Positions 1,528 to 35,142 of a stretch of 64,000 bases of DNA are shown piece by piece. Under the pieces are notes generated by a model. That model saw nothing but the letters and a program-made list of their open reading frames with translations. It did no database searches and was not told the origin of the DNA. Source of the DNA: Selaginella moellendorffii (taxonomy: Eukaryota > Plantae > Lycopodiophyta); the NCBI RefSeq assembly GCF_000143415.4, contig NW_003314275.1, positions 1,369,955 to 1,433,954 of the forward strand. Direction: 5' to 3'. The position numbers were made by a program, and so were the translations under genes. Numbering within the stretch: the stretch's first letter is position 1; each line of letters begins with the position of its first letter.

Positions 1528-1554
1528 GTATTATCGTTCATTAATTATCACTAT

Positions 1555-1755
1555 ATGAAACTAAAAGCTTTTGATACTTATGGTTTTGTTTTGTTTTGTT
1601 TAATAATAACATGATTTTTCTCTTTAAACAGTGTGCATGAAGGCTAGAATGTTTGCTCTATAAGAGAGATCCACCTAAGAAGAAAGTGATGAAGAACAAA
1701 AATATATCTTTTATAATGTTATAGAAGAGACTGATTGTTAAATCAAAATCCTTGC
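1555..1755 (+). pseudogene. AT-shifted relic of the RPT6 last intron, last exon and 3' UTR
   Basis: 1631-1668 gtgtgcatgaaggctagaatgtttgctctataagagag vs RPT6 gtgtgcacggaggctggaatgtttgctctgcgagagag. Followed by aaagtgatgaagaa and gttaaatcaaaatc, as in the RPT6 3' end. Confidence 0.8.
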
Positions 1756-4528
1756 TTTTGACTAGAGTTGCTATATATTAAAACTGAATTGAGTTTAAAA
1801 CCTTAAAAATTCTAATTTACTTACAAAATATTTCACATGTAGGGTTTACATTTTTTGAAATGGGAAAGAGCTTGAGTCCCAAAAAGTGGAAATGAAAATA
1901 ACACATTAAGCACATCAGTTGATGGATAAATAGTGGTGGCTTTATTAAAAAAAAAGTAAATTAATCTTCTATAACAAAAAAAGAAACTCATAAATTTTCT
2001 CAATCACCTAATTAAAGGCAAGATTACATCAATTATCACATATTGTTTTGAAGTGATATATTTTATTGTGATATGCTAAAATGGTATTAAAGTTGTAAAA
2101 GTTTCTAGCAATTTAGTTATTTTTACTTTTTTCTGAGATTGGGCATAGTAATAAGAGTAGTAATAACCAAGGGAATTTTATCTGATTCAAATGTAACAAC
2201 GACAGAAAAGGAAGATGAAATTTGATTGATAACTTATTTTTATGAAAATTACATAATAAAATTTTGTAAAAAGTTATGTTCTATTTCACCTATAGATCCA
2301 CTAATGCCTCTTCCTGATGTTCCTCTAGATCCCGGCCCACTTACAAGAGAACCCTAATGGTCTTCCATTATTCTGAGAGGAGGGGATGCTTTGGCTAAGT
2401 AATACATTAATTATAATATTATAGTATATGGACCGTCCATTTGGGATTGAATCTAATTTATCCATTCTTATATAAAAGTAGAGGTTTAAACCCTAATTAA
2501 TATACCTATTCCTAGAGCACTCACATTAGAAGAGCTGAAAGACACTGCAATTTGTCATTAAAAGATATAGCTTTTTGGCAGTGCTTTACTTTAGTATTTG
2601 GGATTGTGCTTTTTGTTTTTATTTCTTCATTCTCTTTTAGATTTAGATTTGTATTAACTTTTTGTAAAATCTAGAACTCTAGCTATTATTATGCTTAGAT
2701 CTACTTTTTCTTTTAATCTTTATTGCATTATCTTTTTCTACCATACCATACCGTCATCAATTAAAGAGTGTGTCATTTGAGGCTACCAATGCTGCTTTGT
2801 TAGATCGAACTATAGGGTATCATTATATTGGTGTTACACCCATGTAGTCTCCAACTTTTGTGGGATAAGATTACATAACTCATTCTGTTCTCGGTGTTCT
2901 ACCATTTTCCATTGATATAGAACGAGCTATGGATGATGCAGTTTAGTTTTTGGAGAATGTTTAAGGATCAAGTTTACAGGAAGATGATACTTACAAGCTC
3001 GAATGAATTCTGGATTACGATGAAAAACTTGATTATTATAGAGATAGCTTTAGCGCATGAGTTGAAGATTTTATGGGGTAAGTGTTAATCTTTCAATTTG
3101 CTATTTAATATTTTCTCTTTACCTTTTATTCTTTCCAAACCTTTTCTTATTTCGGTTTGAACCACCTTCTCATATTCTTAGTGTTTCTTCCTTATTTGCA
3201 ATGTTTGGTTTTCCTAACATGTCGATTATTTATGATTTTTATGATTTTCATTCTCAATTAGTGTTGAATTGAGTGTTGTCCTCCTAATATTGATTTGAAT
3301 ATTGAGTATTCCCATGTTCCAATGGTTGAGTCACTTTTAGCCAAAATTTCAAATTACATCTCCACTTTTTAATGTTATTGAGAGCCTTTGTTTTACCATT
3401 GTTGCTAAGAAGTTTATGTATTCCTTTGAAAGTGTGAATGTTATTATTGATTTTCCCATCTCAAATGTTAAATTGTGTATTGAGGAGGTTAAATAGTGTG
3501 AATCTTTTGTTTATATTATAATGGCTAAAGTATTTTATGATAAAAAGTTCTTTATCTTCTAACATTTGAGCATATATCCTTCTTTTGATTTCTTTATTTC
3601 TGTATTGCTAACTACTGCAAAATCCTCTTCTAATGTTTATTTATCCACTTTTTCTTTTTTCACAATGGTTTTTCCTTAATTTTTCTCGCTTTTTCCTTTT
3701 TTCTTGACACTTTAAACTTTTTTTTTGTTTGAAGGAGGGGGTAGAGGGGAAGGATGAGAGTTTGGTCCCGATGATTGAGTGAGGACAAACAAATATGGTA
3801 GTGGAGCAAAGACAAACGATATAAATTGTGAAATGAGGATGAATATAGTGATTTCAAATGGAACATTTAGCCTTGACGTAATAAGGCTAAATAAATATAA
3901 TAGTGGACTGAGGCTAAACAAAGATGGTAGAATGAAGATAAGTGTACTAAATTCAAATTTCTTTCGAAGAGGGGAAGAAGGATGTGGAGGACAAATGGAG
4001 TGAGTTTAACTTTCCATATATTGTGCTAAACAAAGACAAAGGTTATAAGTTTGAGTTAACACAAGTCTTAGAAGTTAACTGAAAGGAAGATGCAAAGGCA
4101 AATTCTACTTATGATTATGAGTATGAGTTAACAATTGTTTTGGAGGATTATTAATGAGTAGACTTGAAGGTAAAATGTTTTATTTGTTACAATAACATTT
4201 CATACACTATAGTTCTTTTGCTTTGGTTTAAAGTTATGGCTTTGAGGTCTGTTTAAGCATTTGGCAGTTGTATACAAAGTTGCAATTAGTTTATTGAGTT
4301 TCCGTAGTTGACTGATGCTTATACTATATCTTTAGGTTTTATTTCAGACATAGTTATTAACAACTTTGTTAGTGATTTTGTGAGAGTTTCATATTTTTAT
4401 GGTAATTTATAATCACCCAGCAGAATGATGGTAATTTATAATCACGTAACAAAGGCTCAAGATATTCTTACCTAACTTATTATCATCACCTTTTCATCTT
4501 CGAGAGGGGAGGATGGTGTAAGGTTTGT

Positions 4529-4577
4529 AAATATATATATACATATATATATACATACATATATATATATAGATACA

Positions 4578-4611
<34 letters not shown>

Positions 4612-4690
4612 CACATATATATATATATATACACATATATATATATATACACATATATATATATATAGACACATATATATATATATACAC

Positions 4691-4745
<55 letters not shown>

Positions 4746-4827
4746 CATATACATATATACATATACATATACATATATACATATACATATACATATATAC
4801 ATATACATATACATATATACATATACA

Positions 4828-4905
<78 letters not shown>

Positions 4906-4906
4906 C

Positions 4907-4958
<52 letters not shown>

Positions 4959-5012
4959 GTATATATATATATATATATATATCTATATATATATATATAT
5001 ATATATCTATAT
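4529..5012. repeat. Compound (TA)n/(TATACA)n microsatellite
   Basis: Directly visible, ~480 bp. Confidence 0.98.
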
Positions 5013-5405
5013 AATGGCTCATATAATTTTTTAATTGTTTAAACATAAAAATCTCATAAATTAAGAGTCATTGCATTGGAAAACAATAACAGCCCTTCAA
5101 ATTATATACAATTTAGATCATCTAAATTGTAACACAAAACCACTAAAAATAATATACACAAAAATAATATCATTATCCTGAACTGCTGTCTAGGTATATT
5201 CTAATCCGGCCGCATAGAATATTCGCAGTCCGTGGAGTATATAAATGCAAGACCTGCAGCGCTAGGGCTTTTCTTTGGGGGCCTCTGGCGGTTGAGCTCG
5301 GGAGGATTGCTTGCCTGTGTGCCCGCTTCTTCCCTCTAACGATTTCTCTCGCTTGTGGCGTAGATGGAGTTGGATCTGGATGGCACCCATGGTGAGTGAT
5401 CGCAT

Positions 5406-10152: not shown

Positions 10153-10217
10153 ACCCATACATTTAACCATGTATCAACCGTCATAATAATAACACAACAC
10201 CGTTTCATAATACCACA
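10078..10217 (+). repeat. 3' LTR of copia element 1
   Basis: Direct repeat of 5406-5545, followed by the TSD. Confidence 0.97.
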
Positions 10218-13682: not shown

Positions 13683-14744
13683 GAAAAATGCTGGCAGCCC
13701 CAGGACTATCTCCCGGAGCCATCCTCGGAGAGCTTCTATGACGAGGTCCGTGAGCTGAGGGAGCGAGCCGAGAGCTTGCGCTTCTGCCTCGTCGGGGACA
13801 TGACCACCAAGGAAGCGCTGCCAACTTACTTGACGATGCTCAACACTCTCGATGGCACCCGCGACGAGACTGGTGCGAGCCCGAGTCCGTGGACAGTGTG
13901 GGGGCGTGCCTGGACTGCCGAGGAGAATCGCCATGGTGATTTGCTCAACAAGTATCTCTACCGCACTGGACGAGTTGACATGAAGCAAATCGAGAAGACG
14001 ATCCAGTACTTGATCGGTTCTGGAATGGTAAAGAGCCAGAGTTTCTTCTTTCTCAGGAACTCCAAAGTTCGCGTTTCCATCCTTGCAGGATCCTCAGACC
14101 GAGAACAATCCATATCTCGGGTTCGTCTACACGTCCTTCCAGGAGCGAGCCACCACCATCTCTCACGGCAACACTGCTCGCCACGCCAAGGAGCACGGAG
14201 ACCACAAGCTCGCGTGTTTGCGGCCTCATCGCAGCCGACGAGAAGTGGCACGAGAATGCTTATACCAGGATCGTGGAGAAGCTGTTTGAGATCGATCCCG
14301 AGGGCGCAATGCTGGGGCTGGAGGACATGATGAGGAAGATCTCCATGCCAGCTCATCTCATGTACGACGGCCAGGACAAGAACCTGTTCGAGCACTTCTC
14401 TTTGGTGGCACAGAGGACGGGGGTGTACACTACCAAAGATTACGCAGGAATTCTGGTCAAGAGATGGAACGTCGAGTCCATCACTGGATTGTCTGCTCGC
14501 GCGCTAAAGACCCAGGATTTCGTGTGTGGTCTCCCTCCTCGGATCTTGAGACTGGACGAGCGAGCTCAGAGCAGGGTGAAGAAGGGCCCCAAGACTAACT
14601 GGATTTTCAATAGGGAAAGTCGTTCTCTAGGCGTAAAAGGTAAAAGGTGTACATTATGAGTTAATGTTCCAATAATTTGCTTTAAGGCTTTGCAAGAATC
14701 ATTTTTGAATCTTTTTTGCAAATTTGAATTTAGGGCATGTGCAA

Positions 14745-16196
14745 TCATTTGCACTGCTGAGGAGCAAAGGCTAGGTGGCTCTTCTGCAAATCAAATCCAA
14801 TCCGGAAGCTCTGCTGCTGGATGTTGCCGATGATCCCGAGCTCCATGGACGTGGGAGCAAACGCCAGGCAGAAACTCCCGGCGGTGTTGATCGGGATCAA
14901 GTAATTCGTAGGAGGGAGCTGGAGATCCGCCCCATTCTCGAAGTGGAGTACCAGCGCAGGCACATCCACGCTCGCCTTCCCGGAGAAATTGTAGCACGTA
15001 TCGAAGAGCGAGTAGCGTGGAGCCGACGGGAGGTTGGTCGTGGCATTCCGGAACGCGTCGCGGATGGTGGCGTAGACCGAGGTGGGGAACCGAGTGACCG
15101 AGGTCCCAGAGTCGATGATCACGCCCCCGCTGCCACTCTGCGAGAGCTGGAGGGATTTGAGCGAGATGGGGAGCTGGGCGCCGCCAACGCTCACCCCGAT
15201 CATGGCCGCGTAGTAGAAGGTGTCCAACTTTGGGTTCTTGAGCAGCGGCGAAAGCGCGGCGGTGGACGGGATCGCGGCGGCACCGAATATCAGGCTGCTG
15301 GACGAGCGCGTCATTGGGTTGCTGCGATCCACGAGGCAGTAGGAGAAGGAATTCGCGGTGGAGGAGTTCGTCGAGGACGCGAATATCTGAGATGGGAAGG
15401 AGAGCTTTCCAGCGCCAAGGCCGAGGAGGCCAGCGGCGCCAGCGAAGAGCCCCTCGTTGTCAAACCCGCAGCCAAACGCGACGCTCATCGCTTTGCTGCC
15501 CGTGCCGAGCGTGAAGAGATCGCTGGAGAAATCGCCCACCGAGAAGGATCCATCGCCATACGCGACTTGGTACGAGCAGCGGCTGGTGGCACCGCGGCTG
15601 CCACTGCAGCTGTGGATCTCGAGAGCCTTGCAGAGCGGCGAGAGGCAAGGGATCCGCTGGAAGGAGCTCGAGTTCCTTGGATCGAAGATGGGGTCGGCTT
15701 GCTTGTAGCAGCTCTTGCATGGCTGGCATTGGAGCCAGGGGAGATCGCTGCCGGTGTCCACCACCATGAAGAGCGATCGAGCCGGAGTTCCAACGCCGAG
15801 GCGAACGAAGTACTCGCCACTTCCATACAGCAGGCCGGAGGTGACGGGTCCATTGAGATCGGTCGAAGAAGCCTCGTCCTTCTTCTTCCCTGCGAGCTGG
15901 GCCTTGCTTTCGATCCATCTCACTCGCTGCTCGTCCCTCTGGAGCGTCTCGAGCAGCAGCTGCTCGTGAGTGTGGAGCTTCTCCTTTGCTTCCCGGAGGA
16001 GTGAGTTCCTGTGGATGAGTTCCAACGACAAGGTACCACCATCTCGCGGGGAAAGCTGTAGCTTGTTCTTGACGGGGTGGCGGAGCTCTCGCAAAAGAGT
16101 GGCGACATCGAGCGTGTTCCAGTGGCGGGGAGTCGGATCTGCGGAGACGAGCAGCGCAATTGTGAGCGAGGCCAACACAAATCCAAACGCGCGCAT
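14745..16196 (-). CDS. Secreted A1B (nepenthesin/ASPG-like) aspartic protease, intronless, ~483 aa
   Basis: Signal peptide MRAFGFVLASLTIALLVSA. Motifs GSGEYF, catalytic VDTGS and IDSGT, GNIQQQ. ATG at 16196. Confidence 0.95.
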   Translation of the reverse strand: MRAFGFVLASLTIALLVSADPTPRHWNTLDVATLLRELRHPVKNKLQLSPRDGGTLSLELIHRNSLLREAKEKLHTHEQLLLETLQRDEQRVRWIESKAQLAGKKKDEASSTDLNGPVTSGLLYGSGEYFVRLGVGTPARSLFMVVDTGSDLPWLQCQPCKSCYKQADPIFDPRNSSSFQRIPCLSPLCKALEIHSCSGSRGATSRCSYQVAYGDGSFSVGDFSSDLFTLGTGSKAMSVAFGCGFDNEGLFAGAAGLLGLGAGKLSFPSQIFASSTNSSTANSFSYCLVDRSNPMTRSSSSLIFGAAAIPSTAALSPLLKNPKLDTFYYAAMIGVSVGGAQLPISLKSLQLSQSGSGGVIIDSGTSVTRFPTSVYATIRDAFRNATTNLPSAPRYSLFDTCYNFSGKASVDVPALVLHFENGADLQLPPTNYLIPINTAGSFCLAFAPTSMELGIIGNIQQQSFRIGFDLQKSHLAFAPQQCK

Positions 16197-17445: not shown

Positions 17446-17649
17446 AAAAGACAGGTGCACCTTTAGCCAGCTTCGTGTATAAGTTCGCCGGAGCTGAAAA
17501 CATTCCAACTATACGTACTTTAAGGTAGATTCCAGATTTTGTTCACGTGATATGGGGCCAGCCAATTAACGCTTTCCTCCGAGTCCGAAGAGATTCATTC
17601 ACAATGCACCAGCACCAACTTGATCAACACGTCCCGTTTGGCTTGATGG

Positions 17650-18490
17650 CAACTGCAAATCAAAAGACTACCTTCATCTCTGCAAGGGACTGCCAAACAA
17701 ACAAAATAACAAATTATTTTTTATAAAATACTGTTAAAATTGACTGACCAAAGAGCAACTCGAGGAACCTTTCCTGCTCATACGAAATGGTTGCGACCAT
17801 TTGGCACAGGAGCTCGAAGACTTGACTTGTTGGATGGACACCTGAGACAAACAAGAAAACGAACCAGAGGCGATGAACCATTCTTGAGTTTCACGGGCTC
17901 CACTCTCCTTAGATTTCTACAGCCAAGCAATACATTCTAGTGATCGCTCTAAACGAATTTCCTGGAGACAGAGAAGAAGAAGTACCTTGATCCTATCGCT
18001 GCAAAACCACACAGGGATAGCCCTCTTGGAGAACTTTAGTTTCATCCTCGAGGACCTTGAGTCCAGCACAGCTCACAACTTCGGGAGTCCGCCGGAATAG
18101 AAGTTCATCGAAAAATAGAGAGAAACCTTAGTAACAATGTAAACAAAAGTTTGCTACCAGACACAAACGCTTTCAGCGTCAAGAAACGTCCAAAGCCTTT
18201 TAAGATCGACACAGGCAGCTTTCTTGCGCTTCTAGAAAGGAGCTTCTGAGGAGCAAGGCCGCATCGCCCCTGATAAAAAAACTCGTTAGTTCCAACTCTT
18301 CTTGCTTACCATTCACAATAAGGTCGGACGACTTTGGAAAGAGGCCAAAGCTTATCGATGTTATGCTGGAGCGCAACGATCCTCCAAACCCGATCAAAAG
18401 GCACAGTACTACTGCCAGATTGCATGCCAATCCAATTCCATGCCGGCTTGCTCTTGGAAGCAAATGGGATTCGTACCTCGATCGCGAGCC
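17650..18490 (-). other. Duplicated segment homologous to 29826-30750; possible spliced gene remnant of unknown function
   Basis: High-identity alignment by eye. GT/AG-bounded blocks on the minus strand. No family recognised. Confidence 0.5.
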
Positions 18491-18649
18491 ATGATCTTGA
18501 CAGGCTTGCCAGATCCCATCGATCCCCCACACGGCGCTCATCACTAGCGGCAAGATTAGTGGCGACGAGCTGGACCCGGCTCTGCCGTGCTGGGGAAAGA
18601 GTGATCCGATTTTGGGCGCGCACTTGATCCGCCCGGCAAGGCGCCCACC

Positions 18650-18820
18650 CAGAAAGAAAACGAAAAAACAAGAGCTTTATTCTTTTGATTCCACAACGTC
18701 AACCAATCGCAGCTGTTTCCTCTAAAACCCTCTTCCTCTTCAGCATTGACAATGTCAGTAAGAGCTTTGAGCTTCAAGTCAGTATCTTGGGGCTTCCTTC
18801 TTTTGAAAAGAAGGCATTTG
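18650..18820 (-). pseudogene. Remnant of the 3' end of the SET-domain gene
   Basis: DTDLKLKALTDIVNAEEEEGFRG vs DTDRKFEALTAIVNAAEKEGLRG in the intact gene. Confidence 0.8.
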
Positions 18821-20365
18821 GCGCTCAATGATGGACGTAAGAAGTGTAGTCTTTTGCCTTTTATTGAAAATAATGGCTTTCCAGTAAATTTGTTCTTTTT
18901 GCCATGTTGAACTTTATGTGGCAAAATAGAATAAAAAAAGTGGCAAGCATTGCAAAAATTATAAGTGTAAAATTTTTGGCTCCTGTGGCTTGGTTAGTTT
19001 TAAGTCATGCTTGTTTCGTGTGACCTAGGGCCATTGCAAATAAAATTTTGTTTTGTTAATTTTTATTTGATGTCTAAAAATTAACTTCACCTCACTTCTT
19101 ATTAATTTCAATATACTAGAATTCCAAGTAATTTAAATGATTTCAAAAGTTTACAATTATGATTATATGTATTTTCTCTAAAATTTTCATCCAAAAGGCT
19201 ATAACTTTTAACCTTTTAAAATTATCATTTGAATCATTTAGTAAGTTTCACATAAAATTTTTTGCTTTAGGCTAAAATTTTATTTTTACTTTTTCATATG
19301 AACAGAAAATACCTTTAAAAAAAAGGAAACATGCCTTTCAAATTTAGGCCTTACTCATGCTAAACATACTAAAATGCTAAAAATTCTAACACTTTAGCAT
19401 TAAAAATGATACTATTTAACCTCATGTTAAATTTTATCCTCTTTTGCCACATTGAAACTTTAGTGGTAAATAAGACAAAAAAATATGGCAAGTGGGAACA
19501 AATAATATAGCTAAGGGTTTATACGTGTTAGCCACACCCACAACTTTCAAATAAAAAACAAAAAATAAAAAATTTAAATATTATTTATTTAAGCAATACA
19601 TCACTATATTTTCTATTTTTTATATTCAGTTATATATCAAATGGTTTATTTCAATCGACAACCTCACGTGCATTTTCATATAAAGACATTAATGTATCTA
19701 AAGTCTTTAAATGAAAGTTTATACATATCTTAAACTTTACATTATTTTATAACAAAAATTTATATTTGCAAGGGGTTGTATTTATTTGGATAACTACACA
19801 AAGTTGTTATTATCCATACAATTTTAATTTTGTTATTTCTTTTGATGAATTATTATAACTTATGTTCTTACCAAATGATCATTTGTTTGAGTATGAAAAA
19901 CTAAAAAAATTTATTTACTTGGAAAGTTATAAAATCTTCTTTTATGAATATTTGATATTATAACTTCAAAACAATATTTGCATTTGATAACTAAATACCT
20001 TGGAAAACAAAAATTTCTTAAATGTACAAAAAAATAAAATTATATACCATCAAATGTTTTTTGAAAATCAACTTATAGATGGTGTAAAATTCATTTTAAA
20101 TATCTCAAAGAGTTTGAAAAACTATTGTAAGAAAGTATATCTTTTTTTTTCTAGTAGCCTCAATACCAAAATATGTTTGAAGTTTAAGGCTATCATATTT
20201 TGTAAGCCTTTTCTTTTCATTTTAACAACAACAATAAAAATCTATTCACTAAAATATTATTTTACTAATAATATAATGGAAAAAAACAATTTACCTTTAG
20301 TCACTTTATTTATTTCCTTCCATTGTTGTTGCACCACTAAACATTTATAATATTTAAGAAATATC

Positions 20366-20368
<3 letters not shown>

Positions 20369-20408
<40 letters not shown>
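20369..20408. repeat. (TA)n microsatellite
   Basis: Directly visible. Confidence 0.95.
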
Positions 20409-20410
<2 letters not shown>

Positions 20411-20814
20411 TATAAAATAATATATGAAATTATGTATTTTACTTTCTTTGTTGAAAAGTACTTTTCCAAAAATTAAATTTCATTTACAATGTAAATTCAA
20501 ATTTTACTTTATTTTAAAATGTAAAATTATGATTTAAAATTAAATCCATTGGCAGATTTATGCTTTGCACTTATATTCTTTTATAAAAATGATTAAAATA
20601 GTGAAGTTATTGATTGGAATAGAGCATTTGATGTATGGATTAATATGAAAAATAAAAAAAATGGTGATGCATTACTTAACTAAATAATAAAAAAGCTTTT
20701 TTGTTTTTATATCTTTCATTCGAAAAAAAAAAATTATTTCCACATTTTCAATTAAAATGTTTTTTTTCAAAAAGAAACATACATTCCAAATTTATGCCTT
20801 GATTAGTAAAGTAA

Positions 20815-21436
20815 AACTATAAATATATTTAGTTATATATGTAAGTTTTTATTTTCATTTTGTTTAAAATCGTTAAAAAATGATGAAAAAATCATAAGGA
20901 TTTATGTCAATCTGTACTTATCAATAAATATCAAAATTTAAATAGTAGGGGAAGGTCGAAGTATTTTTGCAATCTGTAATATTAATATAGGGACTTTAGT
21001 AATGTATAACATTATTTTTATCTTTTTTAAAAAGATGGATAAAAACATTCCCTTGCCTCTCCTTCAATATTTGGGTGATATTAATCAACTCCATGACGGT
21101 ACAACTTGGGAATACACTACTTTTTTAGGTTTTTTAACTATGATAATGATAATGTTAAATATACTAAACACATGTGGTAGACTAATGTGTTTGTGAATAT
21201 AAGTTTTTTCACTTTCAATTTTTCATTTTACACTTTAGCTTTAACAAATTTTTTTTTATCTCTAAAGTTATAAACTTATTTTTTGGGCGGTATACATTTT
21301 TTATTAATCATTTTTATAACATACATACTTACGTGATGTATTTAGTGAACTTCACTAATTTTTTTGTGAAGACAATGAAGACTATTTTGTTAAAAGAGAA
21401 ATTTTTATGGTATATATTAACTTAGTTGTGCCTAGG
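20815..21436 (+). pseudogene. Heavily AT-shifted, inverted copy of the SET-domain gene (TATA box, exon 1, intron, part of exon 2)
   Basis: IVGEGRSIFAICNINIGTLV and LQYLGDINQLHDGTT vs AVGEGRGICAICDIDPGTLV and LQCLGDVSQLHDGTT at 31751-31170. Confidence 0.9.
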
Positions 21437-23065
21437 TATAAATTTGCCAATGGATTTAATTTTAAACTATATTTTGCTTTCAAAAAAATTAAAATTTCAA
21501 TTTACATTATAAATTAAATGTAATATTTAGAAAAATGCCTTTTCACAAAAGAATTAAATTTTTTATATGTCTTTCATATAAAATACAAAAGTAAAATACA
21601 TAATTTTATATATTATATAATATTTCATATATTATTTTTTCCTTTGATTGGATACTACAACTTGTATTGCTATCAAATAATCTTTTTTTTTGAATATGAG
21701 AAATCAACAAATTCATTTAGTATATTATGGAATCTTCTTTTGTAAATGTATTTAACTTTTTAGCTTCTAAATAATTTTTGCATTTAATAATTAAGTATTT
21801 TAGAAGATAAAATTTTCTTAAATTTATAAAGAAATGAAATTACATATTATTATAATTTCTTTGAAAATCAATTTATCAATGTTGTGAAGTACATATGAAT
21901 TTTAAATATCCTAAAAAGTTTAAAGAACTGTTGGAAGAAATTATATTTTCTTTTGGTTTAGTAGCTTTAACACTAAAAGAATGTAAATTTTTACTATCTT
22001 GTAAAATTTTTTCTTCTTTTTTTTTCTTTTCAAAAGCAACAGTAATAACTTTTTCTTTAAAACACCATTTTATTAATAGCATAATGGACAAAGAAAACTC
22101 ACTTTTTTCCCTTTCCCCATTATAAACAATCTTACAACGTGAAGTGAGTGGGAAATTCAAAAGTAAAATCATCTCATAGCACAGGACCAGGATTGGCCCA
22201 ACACCGTCGGATGCACTTGCCCAGCACCGTCCGATGCAGGTAATAACCATAGAAATCAGTCAACGAAAACCAGTCTGCCTGCCTGTTCTCAGCGTACGCA
22301 TGTAACCATCGTCGTTGTCTGCACTCAAAAACCATCCGAGAGCTTCGTGAAGGTCCTGCGCAAAATTGGACTGAGCCATCCCTTCTCACTTTCGCAGCTA
22401 GTGTCCGATCGTTTAACTCTTTCATGCAAGACACAGCGGGAGAAATTCTGTAGAAAGCTAGCAAACAAGTGCAGCTCGAGAAAACGAACTTACTTCCAAG
22501 GACGCCTTTTTGGCAAGCTTCGCGTTGGTTGCTGTGGTCTCTTCGCCTGTTGCAACGGTGATGCAAACCTTTTGAAACAGTCACCTTACGTTCGAGCGTC
22601 AGCTTTCCATCTGTGAAAACAGAGACTACATCCAAATTTTGCAGCCTGTAAGAAACCCTTTCAGCATCTAGACTGCCAATCAAGCTGTTACCGGAGTCGA
22701 GGTTACGAAGTTGAGGCTTGAAAGCAACAACAAAGTTTGCTCAAAATTCCCACACGATCCAACCGGTTCATGCTCCACTTGTCTGACGATTGGCGATTTG
22801 TTTCTCCAGTGAGACAATGAGAAAAAGGCCTCGATGGTAACGAAGCATGGAGCTGCACGAAAATTAACGAGAAAAAAAAGAGGTTTTTTTTCTACCACGA
22901 CTCCACGAAATCACACAAAAGCGCTTGCTCAAGAGAATCACTTTGATTCTTGTCGGGATGCCCCCACACGCCGGCGCAGCGGCCCTGCCACAAAAAAAAT
23001 CGTGTTTTAGAAGCAATGAAACGAACCAGAGGATGAATTCAATGAAACGCATTTGCGGCTGAAGT

Positions 23066-24455
23066 ATGTATGTGTTGCGGGGTGATGGGGAGGTGGACAG
23101 GCGGAGACAGTCGCAAATGCGACTGAGGGGCATGCTTGGAAGAGGAAGAGAGCCTCTCAAAGGGAACAACAACCTCTATCTCAGGCTAGCAAGGCAAGAA
23201 GAAGAAGATCACCCTCCGGAGGAAGAGAGTTGCCTGGTAGCACTCGATCCGGCGCTGTGGAAGGGCCTGCCGGCGCTGCTGCTGCTCAAGATCCTTGTCG
23301 ACCATCTCCCCTTGGATCGCCTCTTCCGCCTTGCCGACGGCGACTGGGAGCTCACCGCCGCCATTCTCGCGCAGCCCTTGAAGCGCGACAAGTATGCGCT
23401 GCTGCTCCCGAATCAAAGCCTCGTCTTGCACAACTTTGGTGGAGTCGAGGAGAGCTCTGCTTCTACTCCTCGAGATCTGCCGCCCAGGTGGAAGAGGTTC
23501 CGAATCAGACTCGATGAGAGGGATGGTCAGAGCTCGTCGCAGAGGCGCCTCCTCGCCGTGTCTCCGCGCGGGCTGTTGGTTCTCTACTGCACCACAGGTG
23601 AAGGCGACGCGGGAAATCGTCACTCCCTGCTCTGCTACAGCCTAGATCCGGAGCAGCCGCAGCACCAAGCTTCCGTTTTGCTTCCAGCAGAGTATGATCA
23701 TGACGGCGGTGGCGTCCAAGCTTGCCAAGTCGTGCATCCCGGCTGCAAGGATGATCAGTGGTGGTATCAGATCGTCATCTTGTATGCGGCAGGGAGCAAA
23801 GCTCTGGTTTTTGACTCGCGCTCCCTCTCCTGGAACACGGTGCGCACGGCGAGCGCCGCGGAAAGGGACGTCTTTATCACTAGCAGCTGCGAGGCCATCC
23901 ATCTCCCCACCAAGTCAATCGCGCATGTTGTGCTGCCTCTGGGGCTCCATTGCCAGCTCCCTGAGGCGATCCAGACCCAAGACTCCACCTATTTGTTTCT
24001 TGTTGCAGCAATCGGCAAAGCCACAGGTAAAAAACACTTTTTTTTCTTTTCTGTTCTGATGAAGCTGCCAAATCTCTGCAGCCGACTATCGCTGGGCGAG
24101 AACCCCAGCTTTGGATGCTGCAAATGGTGTGAGCTACTCTCTAGTTTTCATATCTTCTTTCTCACAATGTGTATGAGCAGGCATCCATGAGAATTCCCCA
24201 GTGGTGCTCGGTGGCTTGAGGATGGATGGGGAGACTGGAGACTGGGAACTCCTCCCAGGTCCTAGGGACGAAGTGTGCCGAGCTTTGGTGCTGCCGGAGC
24301 TGTGGTGCCTGGGAGTCGCGGGTTGCGTGGGCGTTTTTGTCGACTCCAAGAAGCGCTTGCTCTCGTGCTTGGTCGATCCGTGGAGCTGGTATATCAGCAG
24401 CTCCGTCAAGAGCTGGAACCTGGATGGCAAAATCATCCAGATAGTCTCTCCATGA
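23066..24455 (+). CDS. F-box-like protein, copy A (spliced near the 3' end)
   Basis: LDPALWKGLPALLLLKILVDHLPLDRLFRL resembles a plant F-box. Donor at ~24027. Start and last exons uncertain. Confidence 0.6.
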
Positions 24456-24899
24456 TCTTTTCTATTGTAAAGTGGACCAAGAGCCACAACAGGAATTTTA
24501 CTCACAGATATAAGTATTTTGTTCCTTCTAGAAACGATTTGAATTCAAGTACTCCACTTCTTGGTGCTGTGTGCTACACGAAATCTCAAAAGAATTGGTT
24601 GTATAATGTGGCCTCGGCCACGAAAACAAAAACATACCTTGGAAGAAAGTTGGACGAGGCGGCCGTTTCATCGAAAGAGAAGCAGCAAAGGAAAACTCAC
24701 AGGAAATTCTTCGTGTGTAGAATCTTCCCCAGAGCCCATGAGGCCTGCCGCCGATCCTCTCGGTCGAGTTTTCCAAGTACTCGTTGCTACAGGTAGTAAA
24801 TCGTCTTGAAGCTGGCCTCGAATTGGTCAGCTCCAAGCAAGATAAGCTCCAGCAGCCGGACGCTGCTGGCAATTAGCTACGTCGTTGGTGACTTCGTGT

Positions 24900-25262
24900 A
24901 TTAAAGGCTTTTGGACAGTTTATAGCGAAGCCCTTGTAATTCTTTCCAAGCTATGAGGAAAACCCTTCCAGAAAAGGTGATGGCCTTTGATTCCAAGAAA
25001 TCTATTACTACTACTATCCAACGTGGGGTGACATAGAAAAGCGCACGCCCAGGGATTCGCTCCGGACGGACCGTGAGTCGCTGGAGTGGTAAAATTCGCG
25101 AAGGAGTTGCAGGGCAAGATTTGCATGGATGGATCGATCCCGACGTGAATGCCGAGGAGCGGGATTTGTAGGAATGTTCTTGGGCTCAAGGATGTCAAAG
25201 GAGAAATCGTGTGAAGGAGAAATCCATGGCGCAAAAGGAAAGAACAGATAAAACCTTATTAA
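24900..25262 (+). pseudogene. Decayed copy of the orphan ORF 16816-17280
   Basis: Shared blocks (aaacccttccagaaaagg, gctggagtggtaaaattcgcgaagg) with deletions and stops. Confidence 0.85.
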
Positions 25263-25380
25263 AAGGAATTAATAAAAGGAACTGCTAGTTTTAGGGCTTT
25301 TCGAAACGAATTAAGGGGGGAAGATAAAAGTGCTCTGTTTTTAGGGTTCTTTGTTTTAAGGTTATCAATCTAAAGAAGAA

Positions 25381-27516
25381 ATGGGGGTTCTTTCTCTGCC
25401 TTGCATTGCGTGTGTCGCGTCTAGGTCACAAGGCACGGCCCTTGCGCCTCACAATCGCGTGGCGGGATGCAGGAAAGAGAGGCGTGGCGCGCTCACTGTC
25501 GTCGCTTCGTCTCCGGGAAGTGATGGACACTCGGCTCGTCGCGAAATTTCAGCTCGGGAGGGATATTTCAGGCTTTTCTCCAATGTCAACGAAGCTACGT
25601 TGAAGCACGAGCCAGGTTTGTGGACGATTTCTCTGAGAATTTCGTGTTTTCTACATAGCTGCTGTAGGGAGCCTAGTGAGTGCCATTTTTCTCGTTGCGG
25701 GGACAACAGTAAGAAATATTGTCACAGCCTATTCAAGGCTGATTTTTTTTTCTTTTCTGTGATTGCTGTCAAAGATTGGAGCTGGAGTTTTGGCTATTCC
25801 TGCCGTAACAGAGGAGTCTGGGTTCGCAGCATCATCTCTAACTTGCAGCATTTGCTGGCTATACATGGTATGGAAGATTTCCATTATTATTCGACTGGTT
25901 GAGTGGAAGATTAGTTCTCAGGTTGCTACGGGATTGCTAGTAGCAGAAGTTAACGTGAGCACTATGTGTGAACTTGGCTCCGGTGGCGTATCGATTGTAA
26001 GCTGTTTTCCAGTTCTAGGACATGTCTGCTGATTGCCGATTGCTTTCAACAGGTTTCCATGGCTGAGAGAACTTTAGGAGCGATTGGAGTTCGGTTTGCC
26101 AGGTTTCTATCCTTTAATACGCACCATTCTTTGAGCTCACCTTGTGTTACTGGCAGCTTGGCATACCTTTTCATTCACTATGCTTTGCTGGTGGCTTATG
26201 TGGCTCGATCTGCTGATATCATATCAAACGCCAGTGGTGCTCCTCTGTGTGTCACTGTCCGTAACTCTTCTTTTTTCTTGTCTTTGACTCTTGTGCTTGA
26301 CTGCTACTTTCTTTCAGATGGGCTAGTGCGCTACTCTTCACTGGAATATTTGGCGGGCTATGCTACAGTGGGAGGTGAAAGAAGCTCGTCATTATAACAT
26401 TGCTCCAACCCGGTCCCTAATTGCAGCCAGCGTATAATCGGGGCGTTTAATGGAGCTTTGGTACTTGGAATAATTGCAAGTTTTATCTCCCTTGTGGTAA
26501 GGTCTCATATATGGTATGGTTTACTAACGCTTATACAAAGACAATTGTGGCATAGGCTGTTTCAACAGGATATATAGAGCCTGAATTACTCCTGCGAGCC
26601 AATTTTGCTGCAGTGCCTAGAAGCGTTCCTGTGATTGCATTGGCATTTGTCTACCAGGTACTGTTTTGTCTTAAACTTGGTTGCTATCATATTTTTACGT
26701 GACAGAATGTAGTTCCTGTTATTTGTACCAATCTTGAAGGGGACCTCAAAAAGATAAGGTACACGGGGCTTTACTTTCTTATGCATTATAGAACTTAGTT
26801 CCTAAGTCTTTAGGACCGCCATTGTGGCCGGGACTGCCATTCCCTTGGCAATGTTTATTGTATGGGATGCCGTTATTCTTGGCAGCGTATACCCGGGAGC
26901 CGGAAACTCATCTCTTTCAGATCCATTGATGCAATTGCGATCACAAAGCGGCATCATAAGCGTACGTTTGTGCTGTTTCTCAATCGTTGTAAATAATTTC
27001 GTTTTTGTAACAGCCTCTGGTGGAAGTATTCTCGCTGCTGGCCATCACGACGTCTTATATCGGTTTTGTGCTTGGTCTGTCGGACTTTGTCGCCGATTGT
27101 AAGTGCTGATTGATTTCCCGAAAGCTTATGGTAGCTTCTTGTTAGTGCTCAAGCTCCCGGGTGGCGGATCCAGAAAACCTTTACCATATGCCGTGACTCT
27201 GCTTCCTCCAGCAGCACTCGCGTTACTATCTCCGGACATATTTTTCAAAGCTTTGGATTTTGCTGGTGCCTACGGCGGTAAGCTGTTGGACAAAAACAAG
27301 ATGCTTCGCCTTATCACTTTTTTGTTTCTCTTTTTCACTGCAGTGCTAGTCTTGTTTGGTATTTTGCCGGCATCTATGGCCTGGTCACAAAGATACTCGA
27401 CATCTTCTTTACCTGCTGTTCCTCCTATGGTTCCTGGAGGTCGTTTGGCACTGGGTGTGATGATAACAGGAGCTGGCTTCATCATTACTACACAGTTTTT
27501 GAGCACATTCTCGTGA
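25381..27516 (+). CDS. Tryptophan/tyrosine permease (TyrP/Mtr family), probably plastid-targeted, multi-exon, copy A
   Basis: Transit-like N-terminus. LFSNVNEATLKHEPG/SLVSAIFLVAGTT/IGAGVLAIPAVT, GTAIPLAMFIVW, PDIFFKALDFAGAYG, LVLFGILP. Confidence 0.9.
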
Positions 27517-27659
27517 GCAAAATGCTTTATGATCGATCAAAGTATCAGCTTTCCAAGCTCTATCAGATTACTTTACGATAAGTCTATCTTGAGAGTGAGT
27601 GTTTGAATTCGATGCAAATTGCTAGCTGAATAAACTATGACATAAAAACTTTCATTCGA

Positions 27660-28090
27660 AATTTAGGGTCTTCTTCCTTGCACTGCTGGGATGGAGCGCA
27701 CTCGTTCATGTCCCGGAAGCGATGGAGGGGCTCTCCAAATCCTATCGTAATTTTTCAGTTCGCCAAGCTACATTCCCGGTTTGTGGACAATTTTGTAGAA
27801 AACTTTCGGATTTTCTGTATGGCTGTTGTTTAGTTTAGCCACAGGAATGGTGCGGAAGGTATTACTACTGTGGAGCTGGAAGTATGCGGACTGTCAGCTT
27901 GGCATACCTTTCACAGTCAGGGGGTATTTGATGGAACTTGGAAATAGCTAAAAGTTCTATCGCTCTTGTGGTGAGAAGTTCCGCTATGTATTATTTCACA
28001 CTTATCGCATGGACTGTTTCAGCAGGATTTGTCACTCTTGCGAAGCCAATTGTGCTGCTGCGTCCCTGCGATTGCATTCTACCAGGTAAT
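27660..28090 (+). pseudogene. Deletion-riddled relic of the Trp/Tyr permease gene (also at ~37540-37955)
   Basis: Ordered short matches to 25385-26660: ggtttgtggac, cagcttggcatacctt, gccaattgtgctgc, tctaccaggta. Confidence 0.7.
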
Positions 28091-28386
28091 TTTCATTGTA
28101 AAACTCTCATATCCAGGTGCTGGTCATCATACAATGAGCTTCTTTTTTCAGTGCTCTCAAGCAAAAGCTTTCTCATATCCCGTGACACTCAAGAGCACTC
28201 TCTAGATTTATTTTTTTGGGAGCACTGCTGTAAGTTCTTGTCATGAAAAACCAGATGTTTGTCTCGTGATTCTACTCTTTACTACAGTGTTAGTAATTTT
28301 GCCTGGGGCCTCTTTGAATTGCTAAACAACGACCAAAATTTGTTGTGGGCTTGGAAGTATCAGATCTTCATCAAAGCCGAGTTCTC

Positions 28387-29830
28387 TCAAATCAAGAGCT
28401 TATTCAAAAATGTCTCAATGTCAGTAGGCTGGATTTTCCTATTGCTGTTATTCTGCATAAAAGGTAACGAGTCAGATTGCTTATGATCGGTAGTCACAAT
28501 TGTTACTTACCCTTGGTTTTGCTACTAAAGCAGCTCGAAAGCTATTCTCTGTCACTGCCGAGTCTATAGACGTGACCGACAATCCTAAGCTCCACAGGTA
28601 GTTGAGCAGCTGAAGCATAACGTCCTGACGCTGTGGTCTTCTTCTATATATCCGGATGGCAAAAGTTCCTTCAACGTCGAGAGCATTCACAGACAACTCA
28701 TCTCGATCGTCACTGGTTGTAAGTTCTGTCTTGATTGCCCCGATCTCTGCTCCTGGGCCGGCCGTTTCTTCTGTTGTTGCCTTGCTGTTCTCTAACTGTG
28801 CTACCCTTGTTTGTAGGTATTGCCTGTGATCTATTGCTCCTTGCAGCACAGATAACTTATCCTGCGAGCAAAGAATGTAAGAGCTTTCATCGATCTCGGA
28901 TTGATCTTACTTACCTTCGTTTTGAATGGGATCAACGACCTCAACCTCGAAATGCTGTCCTTGTGCCTCCTCCTTCGGTTTCGCTCGGCGTCTATGTGTA
29001 TAGTTCGGGTACGTGCATCTTCTCCTCCTGACATAGTTTGTGTTGGTCCTTGTGCTAAGCCACGTGCTCGTTTTCTTACTTCTTCTATTTGAGCTAGTGC
29101 TAGCAGCATCCTCTTGATCATTGCCTGCGAGGTAGTGGGAATTGCCATGCTCTTCTGCTGGAGCGGATCCCATTTTCTAAATGCCGTGGCTGAACTAGTG
29201 TCGAATTGCGTTCCTAGGCTTGAAGTTGCTTGATAGATTGTCGTCCAGTCTGACGTCGTGTAACTTTGATGATGCAGGCCAGGGATGTCCAGCGATGCCT
29301 CGGAAGGAGATTGTGAGAAAATGGATGACGTCGAGGTTGAGGGATGTTCCGTGGATACTGGCAATGCAACAGGAGCAGCATACAGGAATGTTCTTATAGT
29401 CTGGAGCAAGGAGTCGGTCTCAAGAATCTACAAGGTGAACAAGATTAGAAACGACTCTAAGCTTGGATTGTCTTACAGTTTCCGTGGAACCAATTTCCAG
29501 GACGCCATCCAGCAGCGGGATGCACAGGAGGCTCTGGATGATTGTGGCCTAAAATGCAGGTAAGGAAAGGAAACAAAGCTTGCTTCAGTTTTGTCAAAGT
29601 CAAGGACTTACTTGCAGGAAATCTCTTTGCTCGAGCACTGAGGTGTTCGTGACATTCACGCCTGTGACCCATACGTGCTCGCGTCTGATCGCTGCTATAC
29701 CGGCATGCCTGAAAGGTGAAAAAAGCCTTTTTTTATTCAAACTTCGCGCTGAAAACTCTCAATACCCATGTCCGAATGGAAACTGGCAGGACTTGTAAGC
29801 TGTGTAGAACAGCGCTTGCTGGAAACTGCA
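28387..29830 (-). pseudogene. MYC-type bHLH gene, copy A, 5'-truncated
   Basis: [24 protein letters not shown]. Homology to copy B stops at 29827 within exon 2, so exon 1 is missing. Confidence 0.8.
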
Positions 29831-30806
29831 AATCAAAGGAACGCCTTCATCTCCGCAAGCGACTGCCAAACAAACAGAATAGCGAATGATTTTTTATAAG
29901 ATACTGTAGAAACTGACTAGCAACTCGAGGAACCTTTCCTGTTCATACGAAATGGTCGCGACCATTCGTCACAGGAGCTCGAAGACCTGACTTGTTGGAT
30001 GGACACCTGAGACAAACAAGAAAACGAACCAGAGGCGATGAACCATTCTTGAGTTTCATCCCTTGTGCCTGCGGGCGCCACTCTCCTTAAATCTCTACAG
30101 CCAAGCAATACATTCTAGTGATCGCTCTAAACGAATTTCCAGGAGACAGAGAAGAAGAAGTACCTTCGTCCTATCGCTGCAAAACCACACAAGGATAGCC
30201 CTCTTGGAGAACTTTAGTTTCATCCTCGAGGACCTTGAGTCCAGCACAGCTCACAACTTCGGCAGTCGGCCGGAAAAGATGTTCATGGAAAAAATAGAGA
30301 GAAACCTTAGTAACAGTGTAAACAAAAGTTTGCTACCAGACACAAACGCTTTCGGCGTCAAGAAACGTCCAAGGCCTTTTAAGATCGACTCGGGCAACTT
30401 TCTTGCGCTTCTAAAAAGGAGCTTCGGAGGAGCAAGGCCGCATCACCCCTGATAAAAAAAACTCGTTAGTTCCAACACTTCTTACTTATCTCTGCTTACC
30501 ATTCACAATAAGGTACTTTGGAAAGAGGCCAAAGCTATGCCGCAGCGCATCCAGGCTTCCAAACCCGATCAAAAGGCACAGTAGTGCTGCCAGATTACAT
30601 GCCAATCCAATATTCGATGCCGGCTGTTCCACAGAATCGAAAACAAATGCGACATGAGGAAAGCAAACAAGTTGAGGAGCTACGCCCTCATTCGATCGAT
30701 CAGATCAGATGGGCGGTCCCTCTTGAAAACAAATGGGATTCGAAAGAAAACCCAACGAAAGAACAAAGAACTTTATTTTTTTTATTCCACAAGCAACAGA
30801 GCAGCG

Positions 30807-31751: not shown

Positions 31752-31808
31752 GACAGAATGAAAGCAAAGGAGCACGGATTCAACCAAATGTATTTATAAG
31801 TTTGCTCC

Positions 31809-32125
31809 GCAAATCAGAGCGCAAGACTAGGATGGCAATCTTAGCCGTTAAATTTCCCTCAAGCCAACGCCAATCACAGCGCAGGACGAGGATGGGCAAT
31901 CTTAGCCGCTGAATTTCCCGCTCAACTTTAAGCCGACGCGACGTTGCGCCAATCACAGCGCAGGACCCGGATCAACTCTCAGCCAATCACAGCACAGGAC
32001 CGGGATGGGCAATCTTAACCGTCGAATTTCCCGCTCCGACGTTGAGCCAATCACAGCGCAGGACCAAAGGCTTAACCATTGAATTTCCCGGACGCGAGGT
32101 TGCGCCAATCACAGCGCAGGACCGG
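31809..32125. promoter_or_regulatory. Array of GCCAATCACAGCGCAGGAC (CCAAT box) units interleaved with E2F-type TTTCCCG(C/G) sites
   Basis: Units at 31869, 31948, 31982, 32046 and 32104, plus a degenerate one at 31809. TTTCCCGC at 31914 and 32027, TTTCCCGG at 32084. Confidence 0.65.
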
Positions 32126-32935
32126 GATCGGCCCCAGCTACCGTCCGATCGTTTAACTCTTTCGTGCAAGACACAGCGGGAGAAATTCTGTAAAAAAGCT
32201 AGCACACAAGTGCTGCTCGAGAAAACCAACTTACTTCCAAGGACGCCTTTTTGGCAAGCTTCGCGTTGGTTGCTGTGGTCTCTTCGCCTGTTACGAGGGT
32301 GATGCGAGCCTTTTGAAACAGCCACCTTACGTTGAGTGTCAGCTTTCCATCTGTGAGAACAAGCTGAGAGGCCGCCATTTTGAGCACTGAGACTACATCC
32401 AGATTTTGCAGCCTGTAAGAAACCCTTTCAGCATCTAGACTGCCAATCAAGCTGTTACCAGAGTCGAGGTTGCAAAGTTGAGCCTTGAAAGCAACAACAA
32501 AGTTTGCTCAAAATTCCCACACGATCCAACCGGTTCATGCTCCACTTGTCTGACGATTGGCGATTTGTTTCTCCAGTGAGACAATGAGAAAAAGGCCTCG
32601 ATGGTAACGAAGCATGGAGCTGCACGAAAATTAACGAGAAAAAAAAGAGGTTTTTTTTCTACCACGACTCCACCACGAAATCACACAAAAGCGCTTGCTC
32701 AAGAGAATCACTTTGATTCTTGTCGGGATGCCCCCCACACGCCGGCGCAGCGGCCCTGCCACAAAAAAAATCGTGTTTTAGAAGCAATGAAACGAACCAG
32801 AGGATGAATTCAATGAAACGCATCAGGACCAGAGGATGGAAGATCGAAAAAGAAACCGACGGCAGGATTTGGGTGCTGCTCCCTGTTCTAGGGTTCTTCC
32901 ATCTAAGGTTGTGAGGGCCTTGGCAATACTGAAGT

Positions 32936-34784: not shown

Positions 34785-35142
34785 GTATTAAAGGCTTTTG
34801 GACAGTTTATAGCGAAGCCCTTGTAATTCTTTCCAAGCTATGAGGAAAACCCTTCCAGAAAAGGTGATGGCCTTTGATTCCAAGAAATCTATTACTACTA
34901 CTATCCGTGACATAGAAAAGCGCACGCCCAGGGATTCGCTCCGGACGGACCGTGAGTCGCTGGAGTGGTAAAATTCGCGAAGGAGTTGCAGGGCAAGATT
35001 TGCATGGATGGATCGATCCCGACGTGAATACCGAGGAGCGGGATTTGTAGGAATGTTCTTGGGCTCAAGGATGTCAAAGGAGAAATCGTGTGAAGGAGAA
35101 ATCCATGGCGCAAAAGGAAAGAACAGATAAAACCTTATTAAA
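34785..35142 (+). pseudogene. Decayed copy of the orphan ORF 16816-17280
   Basis: As for 24900-25262. Confidence 0.85.

What the first reader, a model, noticed from the sequence alone, without database searches (positions are those of the whole stretch)
18840..22170. RIP-like directional C>T/G>A erasure of a duplicated gene inside a sharply bounded AT-rich island
Seen: the apparently featureless AT-rich block hides a colinear copy of the SET gene (20815-21436 vs 31798-31170), including its TATA box and intron. In the 36-nt ungapped block 21285-21320 vs the reverse complement of 31281-31316, all 10 differences are C>T or G>A. They fall in CA, CT and CC contexts, while the one CpG survives. Exon 1 shows the same bias (gatgtccaaatccaagcagtg > aatatcaaaatttaaatagta) plus some transversions. 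Duplicates just outside the island are far less changed. Known: fungal RIP gives this signature in duplicates, and plant 5mC deamination normally favours CG/CHG. Inference: a domain-restricted, all-context cytosine mutation process (RIP-like, or extreme non-CG methylation-driven deamination) destroys duplicated DNA here. I know of no description of this in a land plant.
Basis: partly seen in the sequence, partly recalled or inferred. Interest (0 to 1): 0.85.

Follow-up and report, generated by a model that had tools for sequence, protein, structure and literature searches.

The report
Transposon-broken gene copy losing cytosines
In the spikemoss Selaginella moellendorffii, a spare copy of a SET-domain gene was broken in place by transposon-like insertions and has since lost about half its cytosines to C-to-T change; this looks like decay of methylated DNA rather than fungal RIP, but it hits non-CG cytosines harder than the plant's published methylation levels predict.

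Summary
In detail: 145 C:G>T:A against 21-22 reverse changes over 648 columns, equal at all codon positions. The window is Selaginella moellendorffii, and its second haplotype served as a control. The island holds a tandem SET copy cut into three pieces whose 10- and 11-bp overlaps look like target-site duplications; two pieces are inverted among transposon-like repeats. RIP is not supported. The parent copy, a 6.8-kb tandem duplication and older duplicates show no bias. CpG is not spared (35/72 mutated), there is no CpA preference or strand clustering, and erosion fades about 100-300 bp from the repeat edge. Age alone also fails: between haplotypes CHH sites differ at 27-35% in islands against 2-4% in flanks, while island 2 has flank-level transversions. 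CW sites are hit three times as often as CC sites (34% vs 12%), the preference reported for moss DNMT3b; Selaginella has two DNMT3 genes. Best reading (0.68): deamination of methylcytosine in transposon heterochromatin. Open point: CHH loss is high relative to published leaf mCHH. No methylome or reads could be obtained. The scan found this pattern before on other DNA of this genome (s1-411631).

The parts
18880..22180 (.). AT-rich island (GC about 0.21, CpG o/e 0.29): nest of non-coding repeats and SET gene fragments
20800..21433 (+). S5: eroded 5' part of a SET gene copy (TATA, exon 1, intron, start of exon 2) = parent 31816-31168, inverted against the native orientation; 3 in-frame stops, NHSC motif reads NHFY
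19352..19419 (+). Sm: 68-bp middle piece of the same SET copy = parent 31177-31110, also inverted; overlaps S5 by 10 bp and S3 by 11 bp (target-site-duplication-like)
   Evidence: haplotype-2 copy scores 76.5, shuffle maximum 46.5; the window copy alone is weak, P 0.055
18719..18879 (-). S3: 3' part of the same SET copy, in place and in native orientation = parent 30946-31120; C>T load falls from 10/23 at the island edge to 2/21 at 135-180 bp
19339..19351 (-). 13-bp putative element terminus abutting Sm
   Evidence: 4 matches in 64 kb, all in the island at junctions; pattern derived after the fact
20553..20565 (-). 13-bp putative element terminus at the end of the left B arm
20787..20799 (-). 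13-bp putative element terminus abutting the 5' end of S5
21434..21446 (+). 13-bp putative element terminus abutting the 3' end of S5
20347..20565 (+). B arm, left: about 200-bp inverted repeat (81% identical to the right arm), includes a (TA)n run
21434..21635 (-). B arm, right: inverted partner of 20347-20565; the pair flanks the inverted S5
18880..18960 (+). T1: about 80-bp hairpin-bearing repeat abutting S3 (putative long terminal repeat of a second element)
19420..19507 (+). T2: second copy of the T repeat (73% identical), abutting the end of Sm
19545..19702 (+). A segment; inverted copy at 20566-20725
19792..20314 (+). C segment; direct copy at 21594-22121 (73% identical, transitions 42 vs 45, so both copies decay); no Pfam match
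22160..22213 (-). Remnant of the CCAAT-box promoter repeat of the broken copy, at the sharp right edge of the island
   Evidence: modest score
30807..31751 (-). Intact parent/paralog: SET-domain (SMYD-like by resemblance) gene, exon 1 31751-31397, intron 31396-31337, exon 2 31336-30807, GC 0.47; no matching public protein found; expression untested
31805..32132 (-). Tandem CCAAT-box promoter repeats of the parent; in haplotype 2 the C>T erosion stops where these repeats begin
23059..29828 (+). Control: 6.8-kb tandem duplicate of 32929-39696, 98.5% identical, transitions 12 vs 14, transversions 18, no bias
1528..5200 (.). Control and second example: AT island 2, with an eroded RPT6 fragment at 1555-1798; shared with haplotype 2

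Best explanation
A tandem copy of the SET gene was hit in exon 2 by two non-autonomous DNA-transposon-like insertions (10-11-bp target overlaps, Mutator-like), then shuffled by local inversions. The anatomy is shown; the transposon class and order of events are inferred. The repeat nest became methylated heterochromatin in CG, CHG and CHH contexts through MET1, CMT and DNMT3, and methylation spread about 100-300 bp into adjoining gene DNA (inferred, no methylome seen). Methylcytosines deaminate to T one at a time on both strands and are fixed neutrally, independently in both haplotypes (pattern shown; chemistry from established knowledge). What is hit depends on position in or beside the repeat nest, not on having a duplicate. 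The CHH share points to a DNMT3-type CW-preferring methylase that is more active in the cells that transmit mutations than bulk leaf data suggest (inferred).
For: Three pieces tile the gene with 10- and 11-bp overlaps and abut repeated termini. Load falls with distance from the repeats in three places: haplotype-2 SET copy 0.27, 0.35, 0.30, 0.23, 0.19, then 0, 0, 0.05 per 60 bp, and S3 in both haplotypes. Less-eroded copies show the plant order CG>=CHG>CHH: 0.46/0.33/0.21 and 0.67/0.64/0.25. CG dyads in the haplotype-2 copy are mostly mutated on one side only (9 of 11). Between haplotypes CWH 143/421 vs CCH 8/67, P 1.8e-4; moss DNMT3b prefers CWH (PMC6453930); S. moellendorffii has two DNMT3 genes and a CMT. 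No strand coordination in any of 11 tests. Equal load at codon positions 1, 2, 3: 45/95, 35/72, 36/83. Selaginella repeats are methylated (PMC2442089; PMC6073778). Deamination decay of repeats is described in Arabidopsis and Welwitschia.
Against: No methylation data for this locus (no run was listed). Published genic levels for this species are mCG 2.0%, mCHG 0.89%, mCHH 0.09%; these are gene-body, not transposon, values, but they put CHH far below CG, whereas CHH transitions run at roughly half to two thirds of the CG frequency. In the focal relic the spectrum is flat, and a context-dependent simulation disfavours CG/CHH rate ratios of 3 or more by about 6 log-likelihood units. The parent is a paralog, not the true ancestor, which blurs contexts. 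The repeats could not be shown to be dispersed genome-wide, so 'transposon' rests on local anatomy.
Confidence: 0.68

Rival explanations
1. Enzyme-accelerated deamination: a chromatin-targeted methyltransferase (DNMT3 or CMT) or a deaminase converts C to T in silenced domains much faster than spontaneous 5mC decay, without needing homology pairing, as Dim2 does in the fungus Zymoseptoria.
For: CHH transitions are 7-19 times the flank frequency although published mCHH is low. CW over CC preference. Flat spectrum in the focal relic. Island 2 has 98 transitions to 11 transversions between haplotypes. Precedent: Dim2 promotes mitotic C>T at CA sites in repeats (PMC8016269).
Against: No strand-coordinated clusters. 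CG>CHG>CHH order in less-eroded copies. Transversions are also raised in island 1 (0.05 per site vs 0.014-0.022). High CHH methylation in germ cells, known in Marchantia sperm through DNMT3b and CMTa, would explain the same data with no new chemistry.
Confidence: 0.17
2. Methylation-independent decay: old neutral DNA in a repair-poor, recombination-poor domain drifts to AT through unrepaired deamination and oxidation of ordinary C and G.
For: C:G>A:T is also biased, 30 vs 6-7. About 15% of A/T sites differ between relic and parent, so the relic is old. Flat spectrum in the focal relic.
Against: Island 2 has flank-level transversions (0.010 vs 0.014 per site) with 14 times the CHH transitions, so time alone fails. 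CG>CHG>CHH and CW>CC preferences match methylase specificities.
Confidence: 0.1
3. True RIP or a close analogue: homology pairing between duplicates triggers C>T mutation of the duplicated DNA.
For: Strong directional C:G>T:A in a duplicated gene. A plant that propagates mostly clonally (my own knowledge, not tested) might not yet have passed young duplicates through a sexual cycle.
Against: The parent copy is intact with GC 0.47. The 6.8-kb tandem pair and older duplicates at 3-8% divergence show no comparable bias. The same duplicated promoter DNA is untouched beyond 300 bp from the repeat. No CpA preference: CA 0.51, CT 0.56, CG 0.49. RIP indices are weak: TpA/ApT 0.95-1.05, substrate 0.94-1.20 (definitions). 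About 30% of differences are not C:G>T:A. No strand clusters.
Confidence: 0.03
4. The relic descends from a functional AT-rich paralog elsewhere, or is an assembly or sequencing artefact.
For: I could not search the whole genome for paralogs; the homolog searches found no Selaginella relative. No reads were available.
Against: Three in-frame stops, a 13-14-bp deletion, loss of the NHSC motif and equal load at all codon positions. The pieces tile a local copy in place. An independently assembled haplotype carries the same island with its own, different C>T changes.
Confidence: 0.02

Closest known systems
Deamination-driven decay of methylated repeats in plants (Arabidopsis, Maumus and Quesneville 2014, PMC4090718; Welwitschia, PMC8275611)
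   Same: Repeats and adjoining DNA lose G+C with age through 5mC deamination; young intact elements are GC-richer (the Copia at 5406-10217 has GC above 0.5 and identical LTRs); methylation can spread into flanking genes.
   Different: Here the drop is steep (0.47 to 0.21-0.24), is measured between two haplotypes, and CHH sites carry most of the changes in a species whose published mCHH is low.
DNMT3b/CMT non-CG methylation of moss and liverwort heterochromatin (Yaari et al. 2019, PMC6453930; Marchantia sperm, 10.1101/2021.02.12.428880)
   Same: CHH methylation of transposons by DNMT3 with CWH preference; S. moellendorffii has two DNMT3 genes; the mutation pattern here prefers CW over CC threefold.
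   Different: Those papers report methylation, not a mutational footprint, and not in Selaginella; moss repeats carry about 36% mCHH (PMC4083422), which is not documented for Selaginella in what I could read.
Repeat-induced point mutation (Neurospora; RID-dependent)
   Same: Many directional C:G>T:A changes leaving AT-rich relics of a duplicated sequence.
   Different: Partner copy unharmed; large linked duplicates unharmed; no CpA preference; no strand clusters; substantial transversions; load set by distance from the repeat nest.
Dim2-promoted mitotic C>T in Zymoseptoria tritici repeats (PMC8016269)
   Same: Methyltransferase-linked, repeat-restricted rise in non-CG C>T without a sexual cycle.
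   Different: There it is CA-specific and shown by experiment; here CT is at least as hit as CA, CG and CHG are hit more, and no enzyme has been tested.
Mutator-like non-autonomous elements and Pack-MULEs
   Same: Terminal inverted repeats, 10-11-bp target overlaps, a gene fragment lying between inverted repeats.
   Different: The gene fragments were not carried in from elsewhere: the three pieces tile a copy that sits in its native tandem position. No transposase, and genome-wide copies were not testable.

Membership tests
RIP | Strong directional C:G>T:A excess | tested here: met
   145 vs 21-22, P 2e-23
RIP | Both copies of a duplication are mutated | tested here: not met
   Parent keeps its open frame, NHSC motif and GC 0.47; reverse changes are 6% of A/T sites
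RIP | Linked duplicates over about 400 bp and over 80% identity are targets | tested here: not met
   6.8-kb tandem pair: transitions 12 vs 14, transversions 18; other duplicates weakly biased or unbiased (thresholds). Caveat: young duplicates may not have passed a sexual cycle.
RIP | Dinucleotide preference (CpA in Neurospora) and RIP indices | tested here: not met
   CA 0.51, CT 0.56, CG 0.49, CC 0.35; TpA/ApT 0.95 island, 1.05 relic; substrate index 1.20 and 0.94
RIP | Strand-coordinated clusters of mutations (from my own knowledge of RIP) | tested here: not met
   No excess of same-strand neighbours in 11 tests; many rounds could hide it
RIP | RID/Masc1-type methyltransferase and premeiotic timing | not testable with these tools
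   No query sequence was available from a tool; scan notes hold no such term; published lists give DNMT3 and CMT
Methylation-driven repeat decay | C>T load follows CG>=CHG>CHH | tested here: inconclusive
   Met in two less-eroded copies and between haplotypes; flat in the focal relic
Methylation-driven repeat decay | Sub-context matches plant non-CG methylases (CW over CC) | tested here: met
   143/421 vs 8/67 between haplotypes, P 1.8e-4; 66/126 vs 16/49 in the relic, P 0.03; not significant when four parent-relic pairs are pooled, P 0.26
Methylation-driven repeat decay | Confined to repeats and fading into adjoining DNA | tested here: met
   Three gradients; island vs flank
Methylation-driven repeat decay | The locus carries 5mC in these contexts | not testable with these tools
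   No sequencing run was listed
Mutator-like element (MULE) | 9-11-bp target-site duplication | tested here: met
   10-bp (parent 31177-31168) and 11-bp (31120-31110) overlaps between gene pieces, both eroded
Mutator-like element (MULE) | Terminal inverted repeats bounding one element | tested here: inconclusive
   Termini are present but face each other only after undoing inferred inversions
Mutator-like element (MULE) | Dispersed copies or a related transposase in the genome | not testable with these tools
   No genome-wide eukaryote DNA search; no copies outside the island in the window or in L001; no Pfam match
Pack-MULE capture | Gene fragment carried away from its parent locus inside one element | tested here: not met
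   S5, Sm and S3 tile a copy in its native tandem position between syntenic flanks

The most novel reading that the evidence does not exclude
Selaginella has a DNMT3-linked, homology-independent mutator of silenced chromatin (germline-restricted CHH hypermethylation, or methylase-catalysed deamination) that turns CW cytosines to T roughly ten times faster than in neighbouring DNA and permanently erases transposons and genes beside them: a land-plant functional analogue of RIP or Dim2 mutagenesis.
Probability: 0.2. Interest if true: 0.8.

Novelty: new variant of a known kind. Interest (0 to 1): 0.42.

Why it matters
If ordinary, it explains the AT-rich blocks of this genome as decayed repeats and gene copies, and shows that gene relics can be recovered from them with transition-tolerant alignment. 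The point worth following up is quantitative: non-CG cytosines carry a DNMT3-like mutational signature at 7-19 times the flank level in a plant reported to have little CHH methylation. That implies either hidden germline or meristem methylation in a lycophyte, or enzyme-assisted deamination. The two assembled haplotypes make this testable genome-wide without new sequencing.

Tried and rejected
The look-up of sequencing runs on 18600-22400 listed no run, so read laying and a bisulfite overlay were not possible; this does not mean none exists. The haplotype-2 TIM50-like protein gave no locus. Pfam found nothing in the island ORFs, and pairwise de-deaminated consensuses of segments A, B, C and M matched nothing outside the island in the two loci held. 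Pack-MULE capture, my first idea, was rejected once the three pieces tiled in place. The idea that segments A and C are further eroded SET copies was rejected (P 0.13-0.98), and the alignment upstream of Sm is probably spurious because that stretch matches 20728-20800 instead. CG-dyad saturation only partly explains the flat spectrum. Zemach et al. 2010, the source methylome, is not held.
Full report
Source. Two window proteins are in the public collection, clustered with Selaginella moellendorffii proteins. The window lies on GL377579.1 of GCA_000143415.2. The second haplotype of this assembly, GL377602.1, was fetched as L001 and covers the island. Haplotype-2 positions below refer to the reverse complement of L001.

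Observation. Window 20800-21433 (+) is a colinear copy of 31816-31168 (-), from the TATA box through exon 1 and the intron into exon 2. The load is equal at the three codon positions (45/95, 35/72, 36/83), so it is neutral. CpG is not spared: 35/72 CG, 28/52 CHG and 82/175 CHH cytosines changed, and CC is the least-hit context.

Anatomy. The island sits where the SET gene belongs in an older unit of a tandem array: 17641-18448 and 22395-23052 match the flanks of the parent. The gene's 3' end is still in place at 18719-18879 on the minus strand. A 68-bp middle piece lies at 19352-19419 on the plus strand; its haplotype-2 copy matches parent 31177-31110 with score 76.5 against a shuffle maximum of 46.5. 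The three pieces tile the gene with overlaps of 10 and 11 bp, the size of Mutator-type target-site duplications. A 13-bp motif occurs four times in the window, all in the island, three times directly against a gene piece (the pattern was derived from these sites, so its chance estimate is optimistic). An 80-bp hairpin-bearing repeat abuts the other two gene ends. A 200-bp inverted repeat flanks the main relic, and further segments occur twice. I infer two non-autonomous DNA-transposon insertions into exon 2, followed by two local inversions. The class is not proven: no transposase was found and no genome-wide search was possible.

Haplotype 2. It shares the left part of the island, has 19458-20291 inverted, and then carries a different SET 5' copy, close to the parent, in native orientation. 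Its C>T changes are shared with the relic no more than chance predicts (21 vs 18 expected). Its load per 60 bp from the repeat junction is 0.27, 0.35, 0.30, 0.23, 0.19, then 0, 0, 0.05, dropping where the CCAAT promoter repeats begin. The in-place 3' piece shows the same fall-off in both haplotypes. The same duplicated DNA is thus eroded beside the repeat and intact away from it. Recent gene conversion of the promoter could mimic the step and was not excluded.

Against RIP. The parent is intact. The 6.8-kb tandem pair 23059-29828 / 32929-39696 has 12 vs 14 transitions and 18 transversions, and older duplicates are weakly biased or unbiased. There is no CpA preference, RIP indices are weak (definitions and size thresholds in PMC4165359), and there are no strand-coordinated clusters in 11 tests, only slight patchiness. 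One caveat from my own knowledge: RIP needs a sexual cycle and this plant propagates largely by bulbils, so very young duplicates are a weak control.

Against age alone. Between haplotypes, using sites with identical neighbours, CHH cytosines differ at 35% in island 1 and 27% in island 2, against 1.9% in all flanks and 3.8% in mostly non-coding flanks. Transversions per site are 0.050, 0.010, 0.014 and 0.022. Island 2 therefore has the flank's clock and 7-14 times its CHH transitions. Both haplotypes lost cytosines independently (46 vs 52 in island 2). Island 1 has raised transversions too, so it is older or more mutable overall.

Context. Less-eroded copies follow the plant order: CG 0.46, CHG 0.33, CHH 0.21 in the haplotype-2 SET copy, and 0.67, 0.64, 0.25 in the RPT6 relic of island 2. 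Between haplotypes CG is 0.47, CHG 0.60, CHH 0.31, and CWH is 34% against CCH 12% (P 1.8e-4). Moss DNMT3b methylates CHH with a CWH preference (PMC6453930); S. moellendorffii has two DNMT3 genes and a CMT. In the focal relic the spectrum is flat, and a rough simulation favours a CG/CHH rate ratio of 1-2 there, about 3 in haplotype 2 and 5-10 in the RPT6 relic. Samples are small and the parent is only a proxy for the ancestor.

Known versus open. Decay of methylated repeats to AT-rich DNA is described in Arabidopsis (PMC4090718) and in CHH-rich Welwitschia (PMC8275611), and Selaginella repeats are methylated (PMC2442089; PMC6073778). What these do not settle is the size of the CHH effect. The only Selaginella values I could read are genic: mCG 2.0%, mCHG 0.89%, mCHH 0.09% (PMC5410703 Table S4); they are an imperfect proxy for repeats. 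Germ-cell non-CG hypermethylation by DNMT3b and CMTa is known in Marchantia, and methylase-promoted C>T in repeats is known in Zymoseptoria (PMC8016269); either could fill the gap. I found no paper on RIP-like or CHH-heavy decay in Selaginella. No reads or methylome were available.

Verdict. Scan notes report the pattern on other pieces of this genome, and one follow-up reached a similar view; those notes are unchecked and are not counted as support. New here are the in-place anatomy, the distance gradients and the haplotype-calibrated CW signature. New variant of a known kind; interest 0.42.

Noticed in passing
window 5406-10217: Intact Copia element (1445-aa ORF, identical 140-bp LTRs, 5-bp target duplication, GC above 0.5), absent from haplotype 2: a very young insertion not yet eroded.
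   Followed up: partly
window 31805-32132 and L001 about 5150-5390: Tandem CCAAT-box promoter repeats coincide with the point where C>T erosion stops in haplotype 2, and a remnant lies at the sharp right edge of the window's island; possibly a methylation boundary, or recent gene conversion.
   Followed up: partly
window 30807-31751: The intact SET gene has no matching protein in the public collection and no relative above about 49% identity in the matched stretch; it appears unannotated and lineage-specific, expression unknown.
   Followed up: partly
window 1528-5200: Second AT island with an eroded RPT6 3' fragment (1555-1798, 35 vs 5 transitions) abutting a barely changed duplicate at 25-1527; ends in a long (TA)n-type run.
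   Followed up: yes
L001 about 13400-15670: A 2.2-kb AT-rich block present at this position only in haplotype 2, with a perfect 27-bp hairpin near one end (15390-15461); its other end repeats the right boundary of island 2 (window 5001-5405).
   Followed up: no
window 11995-12996: About 1-kb self-inverted (foldback) stretch of a second, rearranged Copia-like element, 84% identity between arms.
   Followed up: no
window 23059-42694: Recent tandem array of a roughly 9.9-kb unit with partial third copies; haplotype 2 diverges completely from the window to the right of the SET promoter, so the two haplotypes differ in structure over many kb.
   Followed up: partly
window 40861-41134: A second RPT6 3' fragment outside any AT island differs from 42860-43126 symmetrically (15 vs 13 transitions), a useful unbiased control.
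   Followed up: yes
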